From: Podarcis pityusensis
Taxonomy: Eukaryota
Strand: one strand, 5' to 3'
Assembly (NCBI GenBank): GCA_964106645.2
Contig: OZ067045.1
DNA length: 64,000 nucleotides
Part shown: one piece after another, positions 1 through 39,327 of the stretch
Position numbering within the stretch: position 1 is the first letter of the stretch
Layout of the letters: each line of letters starts with the position of its first letter
Made by a program: the position numbers and the translations under genes
The notes under the pieces: model-generated
What the model was told of the DNA's origin: nothing
The model's database searches: none
Seen by the model: the letters and a program-made list of their open reading frames with translations, nothing else

Positions 1-860
1 GGATCACGTCCTGATGCAGGTTGGACTCATAGCAGCTATCCCTCTCTGCAATTAAGGTGTTCCACCCTCTGAGAGCTACGGATTCTGGTGGATTCCTGAA
101 TGCTCTGGGGCACTTTCTGGTGGACAGAGCAGGTGATCCTGTTGAGGCTGTTGTCTCACTATGGAATGAAGAGAACTATTGCAGAGGACTACTGACATGA
201 TCACTCCTGAGTATCCTCTTCGGCACTGTGGAGCCTGCAATGTCCCCCGGTATTCTACGGAGTTGTGTGCAATGAAACAGGCTAGATGACTGCTATAGTG
301 CTGGTGGTATAGATCTTGTTCCAAGGGCTAGCAAACAATGATTAAAGTGCATAATCACACCTCCCATGTGGCATCAAGGGCATGGCCTCCACTGTGTCCT
401 CAAGTAATTGTCCAGGAAAGCTTCACAGGCTTGTCTGAAACCTGGTCTCATCTGCTGGTAGGAATGGGCCTCTGGAGGCAATGAAAGCCTGTTGTGGTCC
501 ATTGTTTTGAGAATACAGTTTTGCTTGATGCTGCAACATTTCCTGAGAGGAATTTGGGACATCAGCCTCCCCCCATCCTGCCGCCACCACTTGCCCCCCT
601 CCCACCTCACCTTGGCCATCTGTCCCTCTCCCCACACTGCCAACTGTAGAAACAGAGGCTACAGCATGCCAGAAGCACATCATCAGCATGCTTCTGGAAA
701 AGATAGTGGCCTGGGCCACAGGCAGAAGCCATAGTACTGTGCCCAAAATGGGACAAATGGGATTACTTTCAGAAGCCAAGGTGGCTTCTGTAAATCCATG
801 ATATCCCAGTAAAATTGGGGCAGTTGGGTGGGATGCTATTACCTGTTTTTCCCCCTTCAG

Positions 861-1715
861 GGCTACCTGGCAATGAAGATAATCAATCCGATGGGAGGGA
901 GACGCTCCATAATATACCAAATGCCTCCAAAGAAGAAGGAAACTCTTGAGAGGCCACCTGAAGAAGCTCCTGAAACACTGCCTCCAGTTGCTGAGAGACC
1001 ACTCCCAGCTCCCAATAAGTTGCCACCCACTCCCCAAAATCTACTCACAACTCCCGAGGAAACACCCACTACTCTCAAACCTCCCACTCCCAAGAAACCA
1101 CCTAAAGCTCCCAAGAAACCACCCAAAACTCCCAAGAAACCAGCTCCAAAGAAGCCACCCAAAACTCCCAAGAAACCAGCTCCAGCTCCCAAGAAACCAC
1201 CCAAAACTCCCAAGGAATCACCTCCAGTTCCCAAGAAACCAACTCCAGCTCCCAAGAAACCATCCAAAGCTCCCAATAAACCAACCAAAACTCCCAAGGA
1301 ATCACCTCCAGTTCCCAAAAAATCAACTCCAGCTCCCAAGAAACCACCCAAAACTCCCAAGGAATCACCTCCAGTTCCCAAAAAATCAACTCCAGCTCCC
1401 AAGAAACCATCCAAAGCTCCCAAGAAATCACCCAAAGCTCCCAAGAAACCACCCAAAGCTCCCAAGAAATCACCCAAAGCTCCCAAGAAATCACCCAAGG
1501 CTCCTAAGAAACTACCCAAAGCTCCCCAAAAATCACCTCCAGTTCCCAAAAAATCACCTCCAGTTCCCAAGAAACCACCCAAAACTCCCAAGAAACCACC
1601 CAAAGCTCCCAAAAAATCACCTCCAGCTCCCACAAAACCACCCAAAGCTCCCAAGAAGCAACCATCCACTCCCAAGAAGCCACCACTGATTCGCAAAAAA
1701 AGGCGTACCTGGTAG
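861..1715 (+). CDS. FER1L5: Terminal coding exon of a ferlin, probably FER1L5, with a long Pro/Lys-rich repeat tail (284 aa + stop)
   Basis: Polypyrimidine tract plus AG acceptor (tgtttttcccccttcag, AG at 859-860) precedes GGC TAC CTG GCA ATG AAG ATA ATC AAT CCG = GYLAMKIINP. This resembles the post-TM segment that opens ferlin last exons (dysferlin NYAAMKLVKP, myoferlin NYLSMKIVKP, human FER1L5 HYLAMSWIKP, as recalled). The exon is convergent with the LMAN2L 3' end, as FER1L5 is in human. TAG at 1713-1715, with AATAAA downstream. The TM exon is not visible in the window. Confidence 0.72.
   Translation, partial: GYLAMKIINPMGGRRSIIYQMPPKKKETLERPPEEAPETLPPVAERPLPAPNKLPPTPQNLLTTPEETPTTLKPPTPKKPPKAPKKPPKTPKKPAPKKPPKTPKKPAPAPKKPPKTPKESPPVPKKPTPAPKKPSKAPNKPTKTPKESPPVPKKSTPAPKKPPKTPKESPPVPKKSTPAPKKPSKAPKKSPKAPKKPPKAPKKSPKAPKKSPKAPKKLPKAPQKSPPVPKKSPPVPKKPPKTPKKPPKAPKKSPPAPTKPPKAPKKQPSTPKKPPLIRKKRRTW
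1092..1694 (+). repeat. Coding 21-nt tandem repeat (consensus ~AAGAAACCACCCAAAGCTCCC = KKPPKAP), ~29 units
   Basis: Heptads read directly: KKPPKAP, KKPPKTP, KESPPVP, KKSTPAP, KKSPKAP and others. One unit is 15 nt (KKPAP). More degenerate units lie upstream from ~948. Confidence 0.95.
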
Positions 1716-1943
1716 TTAGCTGCAGTGGAAGCAAATTATATCTCCAAATGCTGTTGCTTATAATGTCTTGCACCAGAGGACCACTCTGTTCATGCTCCAT
1801 CTTGCCTCCAGATATCTGGCAAAAATGGAGCATAGCTGCTTCTAAATCATAAGCCTACATCAGACAATCCTCACCTAATCTTTGCCTTCCTACAATTATG
1901 AAGGCCTTCTGATCCCAACCACAAATTTACAGCAGCATCACTG

Positions 1944-2099
1944 AATAAAACTAGCTTGGGGTGGGGAAGCAGGGGGTAAAGCACCACTGTAGAAACAGAC
2001 TATCCAAACAAACTTATGTTCAATTCCCGCCCATCCATCACCATATATTTTAGCATATTTCACTCTCACAGACTATCATATTCCCATAAAAAAAATAAA
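1944..2099 (+). terminator. Candidate polyadenylation signals of the ferlin terminal exon
   Basis: AATAAA at 1944-1949 and 2094-2099. The second is followed by GT-rich sequence (gtgggattgttggtatttg). Confidence 0.5.
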
Positions 2100-2329
2100 A
2101 GTTAAGCCCTAAGTCTCGCTGCTTCTAGAAGTGGGATTGTTGGTATTTGCTGAGCAATCCTGTGGGGTGTGCAACTGGCTTGGGTGGGGCTGCACTCCCC
2201 CTAAAGGGTCAGGCAAGCAGCTTGCGGTGGGGGGGGGGTCATTGGCTTGGCACTCTTTGGGGTGGAACAACATCTTCAGCCATGTCTTACTAACAACGTC
2301 TGTGGCCTTACTAAAGAGAAGGCATGCCT

Positions 2330-2640
2330 TGCCTCAGTGATACAGGATGGGGTTAGATTACTGCAATGAGCTTCACATGGAGTAACCCTTGAAGACAGTT
2401 CAGAAACTTTATTTGGTGGCATATGTGGGAGCTAAAATGCTTGGATCACACGGGACCTGTTTGCACCAGTTATGTTGCTTACCTATTTGCTTCTGACCCC
2501 AGTTTAAGGTGTTGCCACTGACCTTTAAACCTTAGTTTGGGACCAGGTTATCTGAAGGGTCCTCTGCACTCATAAAAACCTGCCTGAGACATCCTCCTGC
2601 CTGAGGTGAAAGTCCATACATGCCTCATTCCAGTAGCTGA
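2330..2640 (+). mobile_element. Degraded L2-type LINE fragment
   Basis: ttagattactgcaat...cccttgaagacagttcagaaactt...tttaaggtgttg...acctttaaa resembles the L2 RT C-terminal region (LDYCN...LPLKTVQKL). Boundaries approximate. Confidence 0.55.
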
Positions 2641-13117: not shown

Positions 13118-13232
13118 CCGACAGGTCCCCGGTGACAGAAGAGACCCCAAAGTAGTAGCCGCGTGGCAAGTGTACTCCTGGGATGTCAATGCAGTCTCTC
13201 CATTCATGCTTGCCATCGATATCAAGCAAGAC
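13118..13232 (-). CDS. LMAN2L: LMAN2L exon 7
   Basis: tttcag|VLLDIDGKHEWRDCIDIPGVHLPRGYYFGVSSVTGDLS G|gtactg. 115 nt, carrying the L-type lectin GDLSD motif. Confidence 0.95.
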
Positions 13233-13341
13233 CTGAAAAGAGAGAAGACTCAATCCAACCTACTCCTTTCTGAGGCCACACCTGAGGAATGCCGGTGGGA
13301 ATGTGGAATGCAGAGGACAAAGTGCACAGAGAAAGACTCAC

Positions 13342-13503
13342 CGTAAGCCTCCTCTTCACATAGCGGATCACCAGGAATGTGTCGTGGTTCAAGTTGCGCA
13401 CCATTGCTGTGCATCCACCAAGTTCAGTGGGTCTGCCATCTCTGTCGTGGTCATAGGCGAGGGACCCATTGCTCACCATGGCAGAGACGTATGGGAACAC
13501 CCG
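13342..13503 (-). CDS. LMAN2L: LMAN2L exon 6
   Basis: ttccag|RVFPYVSAMVSNGSLAYDHDRDGRPTELGGCTAMVRNLNHDTFLVIRYVKRRLT|gtgagt. 162 nt, phase 0-0, followed by a 109-nt intron. Confidence 0.96.
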
Positions 13504-14749
13504 CTGGAAGAGAAGGGAGGAACTGCAGGTCAGCCAGCTATTTGCACACTGCTCTGTCAAAGGTCTGGTCACATCCAGTGGACAAGGGAAGGGAAACAGG
13601 CATGCAGGGAGCCAAGCAGGACAGAGACAGAACCCAGAATGAGCATTAGCAGGGCTGGGACTTACTCTGGACAAGCAAGCACAGATCAGCACAAACTACT
13701 CCTACATCTGAGCAAAAGTTAAGGTCTAAAAAAGGGTTAGACAACAGCACTCACTCCCAAAGGAGGCAGTGATGGAGAAGAAAGCTATCAATGTCTACCA
13801 GCCATGATGCCAAAGTTCCGCCTCCACGTTCAGAGACAGTAATGTTTCTGAATGCCCGTTGCTGGAAGTCACAGGAGAGTGTGCTCTTGTGCTCAGTTAC
13901 TTGCAGGTTACCCACAGGCACAGCAGAAATAGGAGAGGCACACCCCAAATTCTGGAAGGGTGTGCTTTGATGCTCTCAAAACACATTGAGTCTCACCTAG
14001 CAAATAGGTACAAAACTAACTAATGTACAAAGATATAAAATGCCCACCACCAGCTTAAGCAACAGTAGCACCGCCTGAGCCAACAGGCTGCTCCACTTGA
14101 CTAAACAAGAGGCTGGAGACTTCCTGGTTACTGCAAGATGGCTACAGACGTAGAGTGCAGTTCTCCATGAATGGTTCGATTGTCGTGAGAGAACACAGGC
14201 CCTTTGCCAACCTCACGGGAGAACTTAACCGTGAGGCTTGTGCCCCATGAAATTCTTCTAAGAGATGCATCTTGCCCTTTTAGACTATACATTTCTAACC
14301 AGGCAACATTAGTGTATTACTTCTGATATCTGCATCAAGTGTTGTTAGGTACACCACCTTTCAGCACAAGCCTAGAAACATATAGACTATGGAACTGGGC
14401 ACAGAATTCCATTTCTCAAAACTTCAAGTTTTTTAAAATAATAATAATCCTCAAGTTTCTAAGCCATGGTTTATAAAAAATATGCTTGAAAGCCTGTAAG
14501 AGCCCCATCCCCCAGGCAGCATCAAGTCAGTCAAAAGCACAGATTCTGTTTCGCTGTTGTGACTACTGGATAATCCACCGTTAGACCTGCCCTCCTTTAT
14601 GGATTTGCCTCAACTCCCTTTAAAGCCATCTAAAGCAGTGACCATCGCCACACTTTGAATACTGTGAGTTTCATAATTTTTAACAAAACACTTGTCTGTC
14701 CTAAAGCCACCATGCAAGGTCTTCTGCTAAAGGGAAGAGGTGAGAAGGA

Positions 14750-27481: not shown

Positions 27482-28539
27482 CTGAAAAAGTGAGGAGCAG
27501 AGCATTTAAGCCCTAATCCTAAAAACAGCTATTTCATCACAGCTTAGTACAACCAAGAAACAAAAGCAACAATGAATCTGCAACTGAAAGGATACAGAGA
27601 CAGCACCCAACTTGTTTTCTCAGTGACTGGGGACAGCACATCATTATGTTTTCCCATACAGGTGAATGGTTGACAGTCACTTCTACTGGGAGAAGTGCAT
27701 TAATTCACTTGAGGGCAATTAACCCAGCAAGAGTAAGAATGTTGCTTGCCCCAATCTGGTGGCCCAGGCCTTGCTGGTAGAGATGCTACAGAACGTGCCA
27801 TGAGGCTCTGTGCACAGAAATACACTGCAACCACCACCAATGTGCCCCAATCATACCAACATAAAAGCCCACCCAGTCACAGGGAGAGGCACTCTGCTGG
27901 TCAGTTTATTTTTTGTATTATTTATTAAATCTGTATACCACCCTTCATCTGTAGATCTCAGGGCAGTTCAGAGCACAAAAATACAAGCCAAAAACACAAA
28001 ATACATTAACAAAAGCAAGAACAAGAGTTCACTGCATACAGGCAGAACTTCAATCACACCCAAAATTTCTGAAGGGATTTGCACAAGGAAGAAGGCTTCA
28101 CTTGTTGTATTCTTAACTTAAATATAGCTACAACACCCTCCTTTCCATCTAGTCTCATAGGCACGCAAACGTTGGGGTGCACAGCCTACTCCACAAGGGG
28201 CTGCTACTCACCCCCCCCCCCTGCATTGGATAGTTGCACAGAGCAGAAGCGGAGCAGCTTTGCATTCCCACTAGGTGCCTTTCAGAGGAAAGGTTTCCCC
28301 CTGTTGGATTTCTTATGTGCCAGAGGCTGCTCATGGCAAAGGGGCAGCCCCAACTTTTCCTTCCATGAGCCACCCTTGGGCCTAGGGACAATCTCTCCCT
28401 CCCCAAAGCGGGGCATCACCTCCTCCCCCAAGCAGCACCACAGCTGGCCAACACCCCACAGGTGAAGCACTTTCTGCACAGAAATGCACCATTCAGCCTT
28501 CAGTGCCTACATCGCTTTTGAGCAGCTGCCTTGCAGACA

Positions 28540-29170
28540 GACATCCAACGGGGGAAGCGCCCCCCTGTGATAAGGGAGCCTGTCCCGGTGACAGCGCCGG
28601 TGGGCTTGCGGAAGCTGCACCGGGAGGATTCCTGCCTGCCTGCCGTGAGGAGGGCGCAGCTCACCCTGGTAAGGCTTGGTGAGGGAGTGCTCCCGCTTCA
28701 GGTGCTCCTCCATCTGCTCGGCCCGGGACCCCGGAAGCAGCAGCAGGAGGAGGAGGAGCAGCCCTGCGGGGCCCCGGCCGCCTCTCCGCCGTCGCCCCGC
28801 CGCCGCCGCTGCCGCCGCCGCCATCTTGGCCCGTCCTCCGGCCCCGGCGGGCTCTTTAAGCACAGCCCCGCCCCGCGTCTCCTCCCACGGCCAGAAACGG
28901 ACGCCGCTTTCATTGGTTCTCCCTTTAGGTGCCGCCCACTTCCGCGTCGTGCGCGCCAGTCTGTTGGCTGCAGTGCACGCCCGTTTCCTTAACCGGCAGA
29001 GACGAGGAGGTTCTCGGCAGCTTCGCCGGAGGCTTTATCCGCGGAGGAGTCTGGGAAATGTAGTCTGTGGCTCCTGCTGAGGCTTCCGGGAAGGATGCTC
29101 AGCGCGGTCTGGTCGGGCTTCTGCTCCGCTGGATGGCCCCAGAGGTTTTTCATGGGCAGGTCCCCGCCAT
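28540..29170 (-). promoter_or_regulatory. LMAN2L: LMAN2L CpG-island promoter
   Basis: High CpG density. GC box near 28866-28876, CCAAT (ATTGG at 28912-28916), ETS-like GCGGAAGTG near 28938, ZNF143/THAP11-type GACTACATTTCCCA at 29052-29065, and a YY1 motif AAGATGGCGG over the start codon. Confidence 0.8.
28665..28824 (-). CDS. LMAN2L: LMAN2L exon 1 coding part (signal peptide)
   Basis: aagATGG Kozak start, then M-A8-GRRRRGGRGPAG-L9-PGSRAEQMEEHLKREHSLTKPYQ G|gtgagc. 160 nt. KREHSLxKPYQG is diagnostic of VIP36/VIPL. Confidence 0.95.
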
Positions 29171-36288: not shown

Positions 36289-36489
36289 TCGCCCTCCCAA
36301 GGCTCGTGGCCGGGGGGCCAACTTGAATAAAATATTGGGGGGGGGGGGGCTGTAAGCCCCGCCCCGCATAACTGACCACATGATGCAATGCAGAGACACT
36401 ATTTGAATGGGAATGTCCACCAACTTTTGGGGGGGGGCGCGCCTCAAATATTTTATTGTGGGGGCCGAAGCCCCCCCCCCCCAGCCACG

Positions 36490-37560
36490 GGACTTGGCTC
36501 CTGTGAGTCGCGGGAAGTGTCGTTGTTCCGGGCGCCGCTTGGAAGTCGCTCCGGGGCCGCCGGGCGCGCCTTGGCCGGTCGGGGCGCCTCCTTAAGCGGC
36601 CGGCCCCGCCCCGGCGCTGCCCGGCGGGCGGGCGCTATGCAAAGGAGGCGAGCCCGTGACGCCGCGCGCTCCGGCGGCCGCGGCCAGTCGCAGCGCCCGC
36701 GAGCCCAAGTCAGCGAGCGCGGCAGGAGCGGCGGGCCGGGCGAGGCTAACATGGCGCTGGGCTGGAGCGGGCGGCCGCGCGGCGGAGGGGGCGAGGCCGG
36801 GGCGGCGGCGGCGGCGGCGCTGGTGGTGGCGCTGCTGTGCCCGGCGCCCGGCGCCGCTGCCCGCGCGGGCCCCCCCCGGGTGCTGGGCATGAGGCTGGAG
36901 AGCAGCGACCTGCCGGCGCCCGGCGCGGCCAGCTTCTCGCCCATCCAGGTGCTGGAGGGCGCCGAGATCAAGCTGCGCCTCTACGGGCTGGGCATGCACG
37001 CGCGCGTCTCCGAGCTGGTCTCCTTCTCCGAGGTGGGCCCGCTGGGCAACGCCTCCTCCTCCTTCTGGGGCGAGGCCGCCAACGCCACCTGCCCCGAGAA
37101 GACGCAGGACCTGGTGGTGCAGCCGCGCGCCGAGGAGAGCCGGGACACCTCGGCCCTGGTCTCCGTCAAGGTGCAGCTCCTGCGCAAGGCGGAGAAGTCC
37201 AAGCTGTACGTCCTGTGCACGCAGAGCGGCCCCGGGCAGCCCTGGCTGCCCCTGGAGGGCCGCGACGCCTTCCTGCAGGTGGTGGAGGAGAAGAAGCACC
37301 TGCTGCCCCTCTGGTTCCAGGTGATCCTCATCGGCTGCCTCCTGGTCCTCTCGGGCATGTTCAGCGGGCTCAACCTGGGCCTCATGGCCCTGGACCCCAT
37401 GGAGCTGCGCATCGTCCAGAACTGCGGCACCGAGAAGGAGAAGCGCTACGCCCGCAAGATCGAGCCCATCCGCCGGAAGGGCAACTACCTGCTCTGCTCC
37501 CTCCTCCTGGGCAACGTGCTGGTCAACACCACGCTCACCATCCTCCTCGACGACCTCATT
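36490..37560 (+). promoter_or_regulatory. CNNM4: CNNM4 CpG island (promoter, 5'UTR and 5' half of exon 1)
   Basis: Very high GC and CpG content, a GC box (ggccccgccccgg, ~36602) and GCGGGAAGTG (~36510). Confidence 0.85.
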
Positions 37561-38167
37561 GGCTCGGGACTGGGGGCCGTTGTGGCCTCCACCACGGGAA
37601 TCGTGATCTTTGGGGAGATTGTCCCACAGGCCCTCTGCTCCCGCCATGGCTTGGCAGTGGGGGCCAACACCATCGTGGTCACCAAGTTCTTCATGCTGTT
37701 GACCTTTCCCCTCTCCTTCCCCGTCAGCAAGCTCCTGGACTGCGTGCTCGGTCAAGAAATTGGCACCGTCTACAATCGGGAGAAGCTGGTGGAGATGCTG
37801 AAGGTGACGGAACCTTACAATGACCTGGTGAAGGAGGAGCTGAACATGATCCAAGGGGCTCTGGAGCTTAGGACCAAGACCGTGGAAACTGTCATGACCC
37901 CACTGCACGACTGTTTCATGATCAACAGTGACGCCATCTTGGATTTCAACACCATGTCTGAGATCATGGAGAGTGGCTACACTCGTATCCCCGTCTTTGA
38001 GGAGGAGCGGTCCAACATTGTGGATATACTTTACGTCAAGGACCTGGCCTTTGTAGACCCTGATGACTGCACCACCCTCAAGACCATCACCAAGTTCTAC
38101 AACCACCCTGTCCATTTTGTCTTCCATGACACCAAGTTGGATGCCATGCTGGAGGAATTCAAGCTGG
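36751..38167 (+). CDS. CNNM4: CNNM4 exon 1: signal peptide, extracellular domain, DUF21/CNNM TM domain, CBS1 and start of CBS2
   Basis: aacATGG start. Contains [60 protein letters not shown] and CNNM4-type [27 protein letters not shown]...[23 protein letters not shown]. Phase-1 donor G|gtaagg at 38167/38168. Head-to-head with LMAN2L, as in human. No exon 2 (KSHLAIV) found in the remaining 25.8 kb. Confidence 0.93.
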
Positions 38168-39327
38168 GTAAGGCAGATGGCTGTTAACCAGAAGGCTGGT
38201 GGTTTGGTCCACCCAGGGATGGCCGTGGGCAGGATTTCTGTGTTGCAGGGGGTTGGACTAGATGACCTTCGGGGTTCCTTCCAATTCTATGGTTCTGTGA
38301 AAGGGGGGAGGATGTGCATCTAATACTAGACTGGCGAAGTTAGTGCCCTTGTAGGGCCACCCCACACATTAATGTGGGAAACCTGGGTTTGTTACCTAGT
38401 GTATTCTCACCTAGGAATTTCAGCCAGTCACAGGTCTCCAGTGAGTGTCTGTATGACACTCGTGTGCGTTCTCATGTTGCATTTACAGCAGTGTGGGAAG
38501 AGGCTGAGTCTAGAATGGGCTGAGTTTGGTTGTCTTCTTGAACAGGTTATGTAGCCCAGTCCTACAAAGATTTACTCAGAAAAGCGGAATTGGCATTTCA
38601 TTCTAACAATTATCTTCAATTTTAGCATCAGCAAAACTCTGAAGTGGAGTAATGCTATTCACCCCCACCCGTTGTATGCTAGTATAAAACAGCCTTTATC
38701 TTATTCACACACACAAACATCAGATCCGTTTGAAACAAGGTCTTGAAAGCCCATTTTGGGGGGTTACATTGTATGTACATTTTTTCCATGTAGGGAAGCT
38801 ATCTAACAGGGATCAAATAGGATGAAAGTGAGAAATGAGATATTTCCCGCCTTGGAGCAGATTAGCTGGGTGAAGGGCTAAAAAATTACAGCTGATTTCT
38901 CTAGCATTAAACAAGAATCACTGAGAATCTGGGACTTGGGAAACTTAGTTGCAAAAGAAAAATATTTTTAAAGCTTTGAGAGTTGATAAGTGGGGAGGGC
39001 AGGTATATTGGACGCCCTCAGCGATTCAGCTAACTGCTGTGATGTTTTCCCCCATTTAAAATGCTTCAGTTCTTAGAGTTGTTGATACAGTTTCATTGCC
39101 AAAGGGATGTTTCCAACCATTTCTGGAGGAGTACCAGGAAGTCTAGATGTTAAGATGAAGTCAACCCTGCTTGATGCTGGAAGCTCTTAAAGCCACACTG
39201 CTAAAGCCTCAACCTGTGTGTTGCTTTGCAAAGACCCCCCACCCCACCCCCTGCTCCACCCCCGTTTCCCTCCTGGAGGATACAGTAATGTTTTGATTTC
39301 TTTGCAAAGCTCCACCGAGGCCCACAG

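What the first reader, a model, noticed from the sequence alone, without database searches (positions are those of the whole stretch)
861..1715. Ferlin (probable FER1L5) last exon extended into a 284-aa polycationic Pro/Lys heptad-repeat ectodomain
Seen: a strong acceptor, then GYLAMKIINP, then an uninterrupted frame of ~29 KKPPKAP-like heptads ending IRKKRRTW*, then AATAAA. Known: ferlins are C-terminally anchored C2-domain fusion proteins. Dysferlin and myoferlin end about 12-15 aa after the TM helix, human FER1L5 has only a moderately longer tail, and mammalian FER1L5 is testis-enriched and tied to the acrosome reaction. Inference: this lizard FER1L5 has gained a long, disordered or polyproline-II, highly basic luminal/extracellular domain, reminiscent of lubricin KEPAPTT, extensin or histone H1 tails. 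It could bind acidic acrosomal matrix or egg-coat glycans. A tail this long and basic is also hard to reconcile with ordinary post-translational tail-anchor (TRC40/EMC) insertion, which suggests a different biogenesis route.
Basis: partly seen in the sequence, partly recalled or inferred. Interest (0 to 1): 0.88.

Follow-up and report, generated by a model that had tools for sequence, protein, structure and literature searches.

The report
Lizard FER1L5 with long basic tail
The last exon of the sperm-fusion gene FER1L5 in this wall lizard really does encode a ~275-residue proline/lysine repeat tail beyond the membrane anchor; lacertids, agamids, anoles and snakes share such a tail, while geckos, skinks, turtles, birds and monotremes lack it, and nobody seems to have described it.

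Summary
Window 861-1715 (+) is an open frame of 284 codons that starts at a strong acceptor and holds 29 PKKxxxx heptads from a 21-nt tandem array. It ends in a stop codon, followed by two AATAAA signals.

The gene call is also confirmed. A transcript contig of a related species joins a ferlin membrane-helix exon to base 861 in phase 0. LMAN2L and a CNNM4-like gene lie downstream. Annotated FER1L5 of three Podarcis species and Zootoca carry the same exon, frame and C-terminal peptide.

New here: basic Pro/Lys repeat tails of 142-333 residues, with net charge +0.21 to +0.31 per residue, also occur in agamids, anoles and snakes. Geckos, skinks, turtles, birds, monotremes and a caecilian have 23-70 non-repetitive residues.

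In lacertids the repeat number changes fast and individual repeat residues are barely constrained. The frame, the charge density and the last 20 codons are conserved.

Three public models read the repeat in another frame. Two of them proved to be annotation artefacts.

The tail most likely forms a disordered polycationic domain on the non-cytosolic side of the membrane, and it takes the protein out of the tail-anchored class. Its function is inferred, not shown. I rate it a new variant of a known kind, of moderate interest.

The parts
843..860 (+). Polypyrimidine tract and CAG splice acceptor of the last FER1L5 intron
   Evidence: Sequence. The acceptor context is essentially identical in Podarcis and Zootoca loci. 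The X2 contig switches to an upstream exon exactly at 861.
861..890 (+). Juxtamembrane peptide GYLAMKIINP, which follows the helix-ending Pro encoded by the previous exon
   Evidence: The motif is conserved in FER1L5 of squamates, turtles, birds, monotremes and a caecilian.
891..1085 (+). Non-repetitive leader of about 65 residues, rich in Pro and Glu
   Evidence: 0 mismatches in 225 nt (861-1085) against P. raffonei and P. muralis, while the flanking intron and 3'UTR differ by about 2%. Against Zootoca pN/pS is 0.39 with no indel.
1086..1652 (+). 21-nt coding minisatellite: 29 heptads of the type PKKPPKA / PKESPPV / PKKSTPA
   Evidence: Tail length from GYLAMK, and so the number of units, differs between species: 284 aa here against 279, 307, 311 and 333, always in frame.
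1653..1712 (+). Conserved last 20 codons, KKQPSTPKKPPLIRKKRRTW
   Evidence: Against Zootoca: 5 synonymous and 0 non-synonymous changes. Against P. raffonei and P. muralis: 2 synonymous, 0 non-synonymous. X1 and X2 show only silent changes at 1703 and 1706.
1713..1715 (+). Stop codon TAG
   Evidence: TAG in four lacertid genomes. It reads TAA in the X2 transcript contig, still a stop at the same place.
1716..2115 (+). 3'UTR with AATAAA at 1944 and 2094
   Evidence: Transcript contigs run to 2055 (X1) and 2084 (X2) and then stop. The exact 3' end was not determined.

Best explanation
Window 861-1715 is the real terminal coding exon of FER1L5 in a lacertid lizard, most likely a Podarcis. It follows the exon that encodes the single membrane helix. 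It adds about 275 residues on the side of the membrane that faces away from the cytosol, meaning the acrosome lumen or the cell exterior. The tail has four parts: a conserved juxtamembrane motif, a Pro/Glu-rich leader, 29 Pro-Lys-Lys heptads made by a 21-nt coding minisatellite, and a conserved basic end, LIRKKRRTW. Its composition is 33% Pro and 27% Lys, with net charge +72, no Cys and no N-glycosylation sequon. It should therefore be an extended, disordered polycation, possibly O-glycosylated on its 37 Ser/Thr. Selection acts on frame, charge density and the C-terminal peptide, not on the exact repeat sequence or number. Such a tail occurs in lacertids, agamids, anoles and snakes, but not in geckos, skinks or other tetrapods sampled. 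With 285 residues after the helix, the protein is no longer tail-anchored. The helix leaves the ribosome long before translation ends, so co-translational SRP/Sec61 insertion as a type II anchor is the likely route (inferred). The likeliest function is electrostatic binding of acidic acrosomal matrix or surface glycans at the membrane where FER1L5 drives Ca2+-triggered fusion. I put that at about 0.3, and it is inferred only.
For: Shown by tools:
- Splice junction in phase 0 into base 861 in a transcript contig.
- Only the ferlin frame is open from the acceptor to the stop.
- The same exon, frame and C-terminus occur in annotated FER1L5 of four lacertids and in their genomic loci.
- LMAN2L and a CNNM4-like gene lie downstream.
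- Last 20 codons: 5 synonymous and 0 non-synonymous changes against Zootoca, with 14 synonymous and 46 non-synonymous sites. If changes fell at random, the chance that all 5 hit synonymous sites is (14/60)^5, about 0.0007 (my arithmetic).
- The leader is invariant among three Podarcis, while flanking DNA differs by about 2%.
- Every length difference keeps the frame.
- Net charge is +0.21 to +0.31 per residue in 13 long tails from lacertids, agamids, anoles and snakes; a 14th, the Candoia model, gives +0.16 but ends in a non-repetitive run-on. Short-tailed taxa mostly range from +0.01 to +0.13 (Hemicordylus, 32 aa, is +0.34).
- Vipera genomic DNA reads the PK[RK]GPP frame without interruption.
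- Mean scaled hydropathy is 0.316, against a folding boundary of 0.506 at this net charge, so the tail falls in the disordered region.

From papers: ferlin topology, with a small luminal or extracellular end (PMC7140416); tail lengths of the human ferlins (PMC9333456).
Against: No protein-level evidence exists. The tissue of the RNA runs is unknown, and two bulk RNA runs gave no reads. Within the array pN/pS is 0.6-1.4, so individual residues look nearly neutral, although that estimate is inflated by alignment of non-orthologous units. Repeat arrays change mostly by whole units, so frame conservation partly reflects mutation bias rather than selection. One RefSeq model (Elgaria) reads another frame and could not be checked. 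One contig (X1) runs unspliced through the acceptor. Topology, disorder, glycosylation, insertion route and binding partners are all inferred.
Confidence: 0.85

Rival explanations
1. The tail is translated but has no function. On this view a coding minisatellite expanded in the last exon, perhaps after the stop moved, and is merely tolerated on the non-cytosolic side.
For: pN/pS is 0.6-1.4 inside the array, and repeat content changes fast between close species: tails of 279 to 333 residues. Geckos, skinks, turtles and birds manage with 23-41 residues. The only matches outside FER1L5 are unrelated low-complexity proteins.
Against: The basic frame and a charge density of +0.21 to +0.31 per residue persist in lacertids, agamids, anoles and snakes, although unit length (7 or 8 residues) and sequence differ. 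The last 20 codons, which are read only if the frame survives the whole array, show purifying selection. The leader is invariant within Podarcis.
Confidence: 0.3
2. The repeat is not coding. The true protein would end earlier or on another exon, and the array would be 3'UTR.
For: Open frames are cheap in this repeat: two of the three + frames have no stop inside it.
Against: There is no stop between the acceptor and 1715 in the spliced frame. Changes in the last 20 codons are synonymous, and the stop is kept as TAG or TAA. NCBI's RefSeq pipeline and the separate GenBank annotation of P. lilfordi call the same frame and the same end.
Confidence: 0.04
3. A separate short transcript starts in the last intron, near 664, and encodes a free Pro/Lys-rich protein from the ATG at 873. 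It would resemble sperm SPKK-type basic proteins.
For: The X1 contig covers 664-1133 without splicing. The tail has 5 [ST]PKK motifs.
Against: It is not shown that X1 is RNA; the contig may be pre-mRNA or DNA. Six ATGs lie in 666-832, all upstream of the one at 873, and the upstream frame is closed by stops. X2 shows the spliced ferlin form.
Confidence: 0.03

Closest known systems
FER1L5 of mammals (human and mouse) and other ferlins (dysferlin, myoferlin, otoferlin)
   Same: Orthologous gene: the same membrane-helix end and the same juxtamembrane motif. Orthologs carry the same C2/FerI/FerA/FerB/Ferlin_C architecture. FER1L5 already has the longest post-helix tail among the human ferlins, at 66-75 residues (PMC9333456).
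   Different: The tail here has about 275 residues past the juxtamembrane motif, is repetitive and carries net charge +72. Monotreme tails of 67-70 residues are non-repetitive with net charge about +1. Dysferlin and myoferlin have 12-13 residues after the helix.
Tail-anchored membrane proteins (TRC40/GET or EMC clients; otoferlin is a WRB/TRC40 client, Vogl et al. 2016, cited in PMC8745461)
   Same: A single C-terminal helix, a large cytosolic N-terminal part, and no signal peptide expected.
   Different: 285 residues follow the helix, far beyond the few tens that define the class (established knowledge). The helix is exposed during translation, so post-translational insertion is not forced and is unlikely.
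Mucin-like Pro/Thr/Ser tandem repeats, such as lubricin KEPAPTT
   Same: Heptad tandem repeats rich in Pro with Ser/Thr, located on the non-cytosolic side, and variable in number between species.
   Different: Lys at 27% dominates and Ser+Thr is only 13%. No homology. O-glycosylation is untested.
Titin PEVK segment and histone H1 / sperm SPKK tails
   Same: Low-complexity Pro/Lys sequence expected to be extended and disordered. A titin-like protein is among the HMMER hits.
   Different: The resemblance is in composition only. There are few Glu or Val, and the compartment differs: non-cytosolic here, sarcomere or nucleus there.

Membership tests
Ferlin / FER1L5 ortholog | C-terminal membrane helix ending in a conserved Pro, followed by a [GN]Y[LA]AMK-type juxtamembrane motif | tested here: met
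   The X2 contig reads ...LFATFIYAAP just before GYLAMKIINP at base 861. The same join is present in lacertid FER1L5 proteins and loci.
Ferlin / FER1L5 ortholog | Multiple C2 domains plus FerI, FerA, FerB and Ferlin_C encoded upstream in the same gene | tested here: inconclusive
   The upstream exons lie outside the window. Orthologous loci L001 and L003-L005, whose last exon is 94-100% identical to the window over the leader, carry these Pfam domains.
Ferlin / FER1L5 ortholog | Gene order FER1L5 - LMAN2L - CNNM4 (the human order is recalled from memory) | tested here: met
   A legume-like lectin exon lies on the - strand at 13222-13692. A CNNM4-type Ig domain plus a CNNM domain lie at 36388-38184 on the + strand.
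Ferlin / FER1L5 ortholog | Testis-enriched expression (known for mouse and human) | not tested
   The tissues of the runs are coded. Two bulk RNA runs gave 0 reads, which is no test.
Tail-anchored proteins | The helix lies so close to the C-terminus (a few tens of residues) that it leaves the ribosome only after termination | tested here: not met
   285 residues follow the helix. The threshold itself is established knowledge and was not tested here.
Mucin-like PTS domain | Tandem repeats dominated by Pro/Thr/Ser, with dense O-glycosylation | tested here: inconclusive
   Pro 33% and Ser+Thr 13%, with 23 [ST]P sites, but Lys 27%. Glycosylation cannot be tested with these tools.
Histone H1 / SPKK basic proteins | S/TPKK repeats in a nuclear DNA-binding protein | tested here: not met
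   Only 5 exact [ST]PKK motifs. The sequence is joined by splicing to a membrane helix, so it is not a free nuclear protein.

The most novel reading that the evidence does not exclude
In lacertids, iguanians and snakes, FER1L5 has become a two-faced protein. Its cytosolic C2 machinery drives Ca2+-triggered acrosomal fusion. A selected polycationic tail of 140-330 residues on the other side of the same membrane binds acidic acrosomal matrix, oviduct glycans or egg-coat glycans. Its fast-changing repeat number would then be a target of post-copulatory sexual selection, and the protein would need SRP/Sec61 rather than the tail-anchor pathway for insertion.
Probability: 0.25. Interest if true: 0.72.

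Novelty: new variant of a known kind. Interest (0 to 1): 0.55.

Why it matters
Ferlins are textbook tail-anchored proteins with a tiny outer end (PMC7140416). All ideas about how they work concern the cytosolic C2 domains. Here a major vertebrate group carries a long, strongly basic outer domain on the one ferlin known to be needed for the acrosome reaction in mice (PMC9876558).

If the tail is functional, it links the fusion machinery to the contents or the surface of the sperm.

It also gives a natural test of where tail-anchor insertion stops and co-translational insertion begins. And it offers a large natural epitope for locating FER1L5, which the mouse study could not do for lack of a working antibody.

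Practically, it flags mis-framed public gene models in Zootoca (old), Vipera and probably Elgaria.

If the tail is merely tolerated, the finding is a clear example of a coding minisatellite in a reproductive gene. That would be useful to know, but ordinary.

Tried and rejected
- Frame-drift idea, rejected. The first ferlin hit (Zootoca P0004) reads the same DNA repeat as SSQETTQ, and the Vipera and Elgaria models read similar polar frames. That suggested an unconstrained tail. The newer Zootoca RefSeq model uses the PKK frame and the shared C-terminus. Vipera genomic DNA reads the basic frame without interruption, so that model had cut out a false intron. Elgaria DNA could not be fetched because the gene range is too long, so it stays unresolved.
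- Raw RNA runs X23 and X24 gave 0 reads, which is no test.
- Pfam finds nothing in the tail.
- A HMMER search of 1.8 billion representatives found, besides FER1L5, only low-complexity look-alikes: a Puccinia hypothetical protein, nesprin-2, a titin-like protein and a zonadhesin-like protein. These are not homologs.
- The scan's earlier findings hold nothing on this place or on these gene names.
- A paper search for FER1L5 in squamates was swamped by unrelated papers; none of the 15 listed mentions FER1L5. This is not proof that no description exists.
- dN/dS within the array is unreliable, because aligned units need not be orthologous.
- No structure prediction was run. A low-confidence model of a low-complexity chain would not discriminate between the explanations.
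The exon was searched by reference alone.

Full report
1. The observation.
- Window 843-860 is a polypyrimidine tract ending in CAG. From 861 the + strand reads GYLAMKIINP and stays open for 284 codons to TAG at 1713-1715.
- Tandem Repeats Finder reports a 21-nt period over 1086-1684, with 63- and 84-nt higher-order periods.
- In peptide terms there are 29 heptad units of the type PKKPPKA, PKESPPV and PKKSTPA.
- The consensus unit occurs nowhere else in the 64 kb: 16 matches, all inside the array, against 0 expected.
- AATAAA lies at 1944 and 2094.
- An open frame inside such a repeat is cheap, because the unit has no stop in two of the three + frames. The informative fact is that only the frame set by the acceptor is open from 861 to 1715. 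The +1 frame has stops at 874-910, and the +2 frame has stops at 947-1016, 1103, 1277 and 1505.

2. Which gene it belongs to.
- Downstream lie a legume-lectin exon on the - strand (13222-13692), with a first-exon-like ORF at 28507-28863, and a CNNM4-type first exon at 36388-38184 on the + strand. That is the FER1L5 - LMAN2L - CNNM4 order known from human; the human order is from memory.
- Laying public runs on 301-2400 gave the key result. In run X2, from a related species, a 949-nt contig matches the window from 861 onward, while its first 674 letters lie elsewhere. The 30 letters just before 861 translate to LFATFIYAAP, the end of a ferlin membrane helix, joined in phase 0 to GYLAMKIINP.
- Contigs of X1 and X2 cover the exon up to 2055 and 2084 and then stop. 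This fits use of the AATAAA at 2094.
- A HMMER search with the exon peptide found a 2098-residue ferlin of Zootoca vivipara. Searching on from it found FER1L5 of Podarcis raffonei, P. muralis and P. lilfordi, plus a newer Zootoca model. All carry this exon in this frame and end in KKQPSTPKKPPLIRKKRRTW, apart from one Pro-to-Leu change in P. lilfordi.
- In their genomic loci the acceptor context matches the window's. The membrane-helix exon ends with a GT donor 1.40-1.51 kb upstream. That places it about 0.55 kb before the start of this window.
- The window is closest to P. lilfordi (intron 98.6%, 3'UTR 99.2% identity) but is not identical to it.

3. How widespread the tail is.
- Counted from the GYLAMK-type motif, the tails measure as follows:
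  - lacertids: 279-333 residues
  - agamids: 200-210
  - anoles: 142-153
  - snakes: 216-289 in the models that end cleanly; the Candoia model, at 366, runs on into non-repeat sequence
- All of these are Pro/Lys repeats. The units are heptads in the lizards, and mostly octads of the PKKGPPGA type in snakes.
- Net charge is +0.21 to +0.31 per residue in 13 of the 14 long tails. Candoia gives +0.16 with its run-on end.
- Geckos (30-31), a skink (30), a cordylid (32), turtles (30), most birds (22-40), monotremes (66-69) and a caecilian (52) have short, non-repetitive tails.
- Human Fer1L5 has 66-75 residues, against 5-13 in the other human ferlins (PMC9333456).
- So FER1L5 has a longish tail everywhere. 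The long basic repeat is shared only by lacertids, iguanians and snakes. That points to an origin before these groups split, or to repeated expansion from one seed; the data do not tell the two apart.

4. A false lead.
- Three public models read the same DNA repeat in another frame, giving Ser/Gln/Glu/Thr repeats: the old Zootoca model, Vipera latastei and Elgaria.
- If real, this would mean the tail is unconstrained.
- The old Zootoca model is superseded by one in the basic frame.
- Vipera genomic DNA reads 289 residues in the basic frame straight from the acceptor, so that model had removed a false intron.
- Elgaria could not be checked.

5. Selection.
- Against Zootoca, the intron is 93.1% identical with 104 gap columns in 961, and the 3'UTR is 92.2% identical.
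- The leader has no gap and pN/pS of 0.39.
- The last 20 codons have 5 synonymous and no non-synonymous changes, with 14 synonymous and 46 non-synonymous sites. By my arithmetic, the chance of that pattern if changes fell at random is (14/60)^5, about 0.0007.
- Within Podarcis the 225-nt leader (861-1085) has no change against two species, while flanking DNA differs by about 2%.
- X1 and X2 show silent changes at 1703 and 1706, and TAG becomes TAA in X2.
- Inside the array pN/pS is 0.6-1.4. Tail length runs from 279 to 333 residues between the species, always in frame. The pN/pS estimate is inflated by alignment of non-orthologous units.
- My reading: the frame, the charge density and the end peptide are kept, while exact repeat sequence and number are free. 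Part of the frame conservation may come from whole-unit mutation bias rather than from selection.

6. What it most likely is and does.
- Ferlins sit with a large cytosolic part and a small outer end (PMC7140416). The tail therefore faces the lumen or the exterior (inference).
- Its composition is 33% Pro, 27% Lys, net charge +72, no Cys and no N-glycosylation sequon. Its mean hydropathy of 0.316 lies far below the folding boundary of 0.506 at this charge. This predicts an extended, disordered polycation. Its 37 Ser/Thr residues, 23 of them before Pro, may be O-glycosylated (untested).
- With 285 residues after the helix, the protein fails the definition of a tail-anchored protein. The helix is exposed while more than 200 codons remain to be read, so SRP/Sec61 insertion is the likely route (inference from established knowledge). 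Otoferlin, by contrast, is a WRB/TRC40 client (Vogl et al. 2016, cited in PMC8745461).
- Mouse FER1L5 is needed for the Ca2+-triggered acrosome reaction, and its location is still unknown (PMC9876558).
- The likeliest role of the tail is electrostatic binding of acidic matrix or glycans at the fusing membrane. I give this about 0.3. A merely tolerated minisatellite also gets about 0.3.

7. Comparison with what is known, and novelty.
- The gene is a member of a known family, and the exon is already part of automated gene models.
- None of the FER1L5 and ferlin papers I consulted describes a long basic tail. One tabulates the 66-75-residue human tail without comment. My squamate-specific paper search returned nothing relevant, so a description elsewhere cannot be excluded.
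- I rate it a new variant of a known kind, with interest 0.55.

8. Limits.
- There are no protein data, the tissues of the RNA runs are unknown, and one contig (X1) is unspliced.

Noticed in passing
window 13222-13692 (-), 28507-28863 (-), 36388-38184 (+): LMAN2L-like lectin exons on the - strand and a CNNM4-like first exon on the + strand. GC peaks of 0.56 at 28-30 kb and 0.65 at 36-38 kb look like CpG-island promoters with first exons.
   Followed up: partly
window 664-1133: The run X1 contig runs unspliced through the acceptor at 860/861. It could be pre-mRNA, DNA in the run, or a start inside the intron. Six ATGs lie in 666-832, upstream of the one at 873.
   Followed up: partly
window 2264-2400 and beyond: Run X2 has a separate 763-nt contig that starts at 2264 with no mismatch. 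It may be the 3' end of the convergent LMAN2L transcript, about 180 nt from the end of the FER1L5 contig.
   Followed up: no
P0004, P0133 / L002:96147-97020, P0123: Public FER1L5 models with the repeat tail in the wrong frame: the old Zootoca XP_034974750.1 and Vipera latastei KAM3830445.1 (false intron). Elgaria XP_062995536.1 is suspect but could not be checked.
   Followed up: yes
P0245 (Gavia), P0130 (Candoia): A 196-residue non-repetitive tail in one bird model, and a non-repeat extension after the snake repeats in Candoia. Both look like gene-model run-ons.
   Followed up: no
window 565-640: A long C-rich pyrimidine stretch in the last FER1L5 intron, just upstream of where the X1 contig begins.
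   Followed up: no
window 1653-1712: Synonymous divergence in the last 20 codons is high, at pS 0.14-0.36 against 0.02-0.08 in flanking DNA. It is probably driven by the CpG sites in this stretch; the numbers are small.
   Followed up: no
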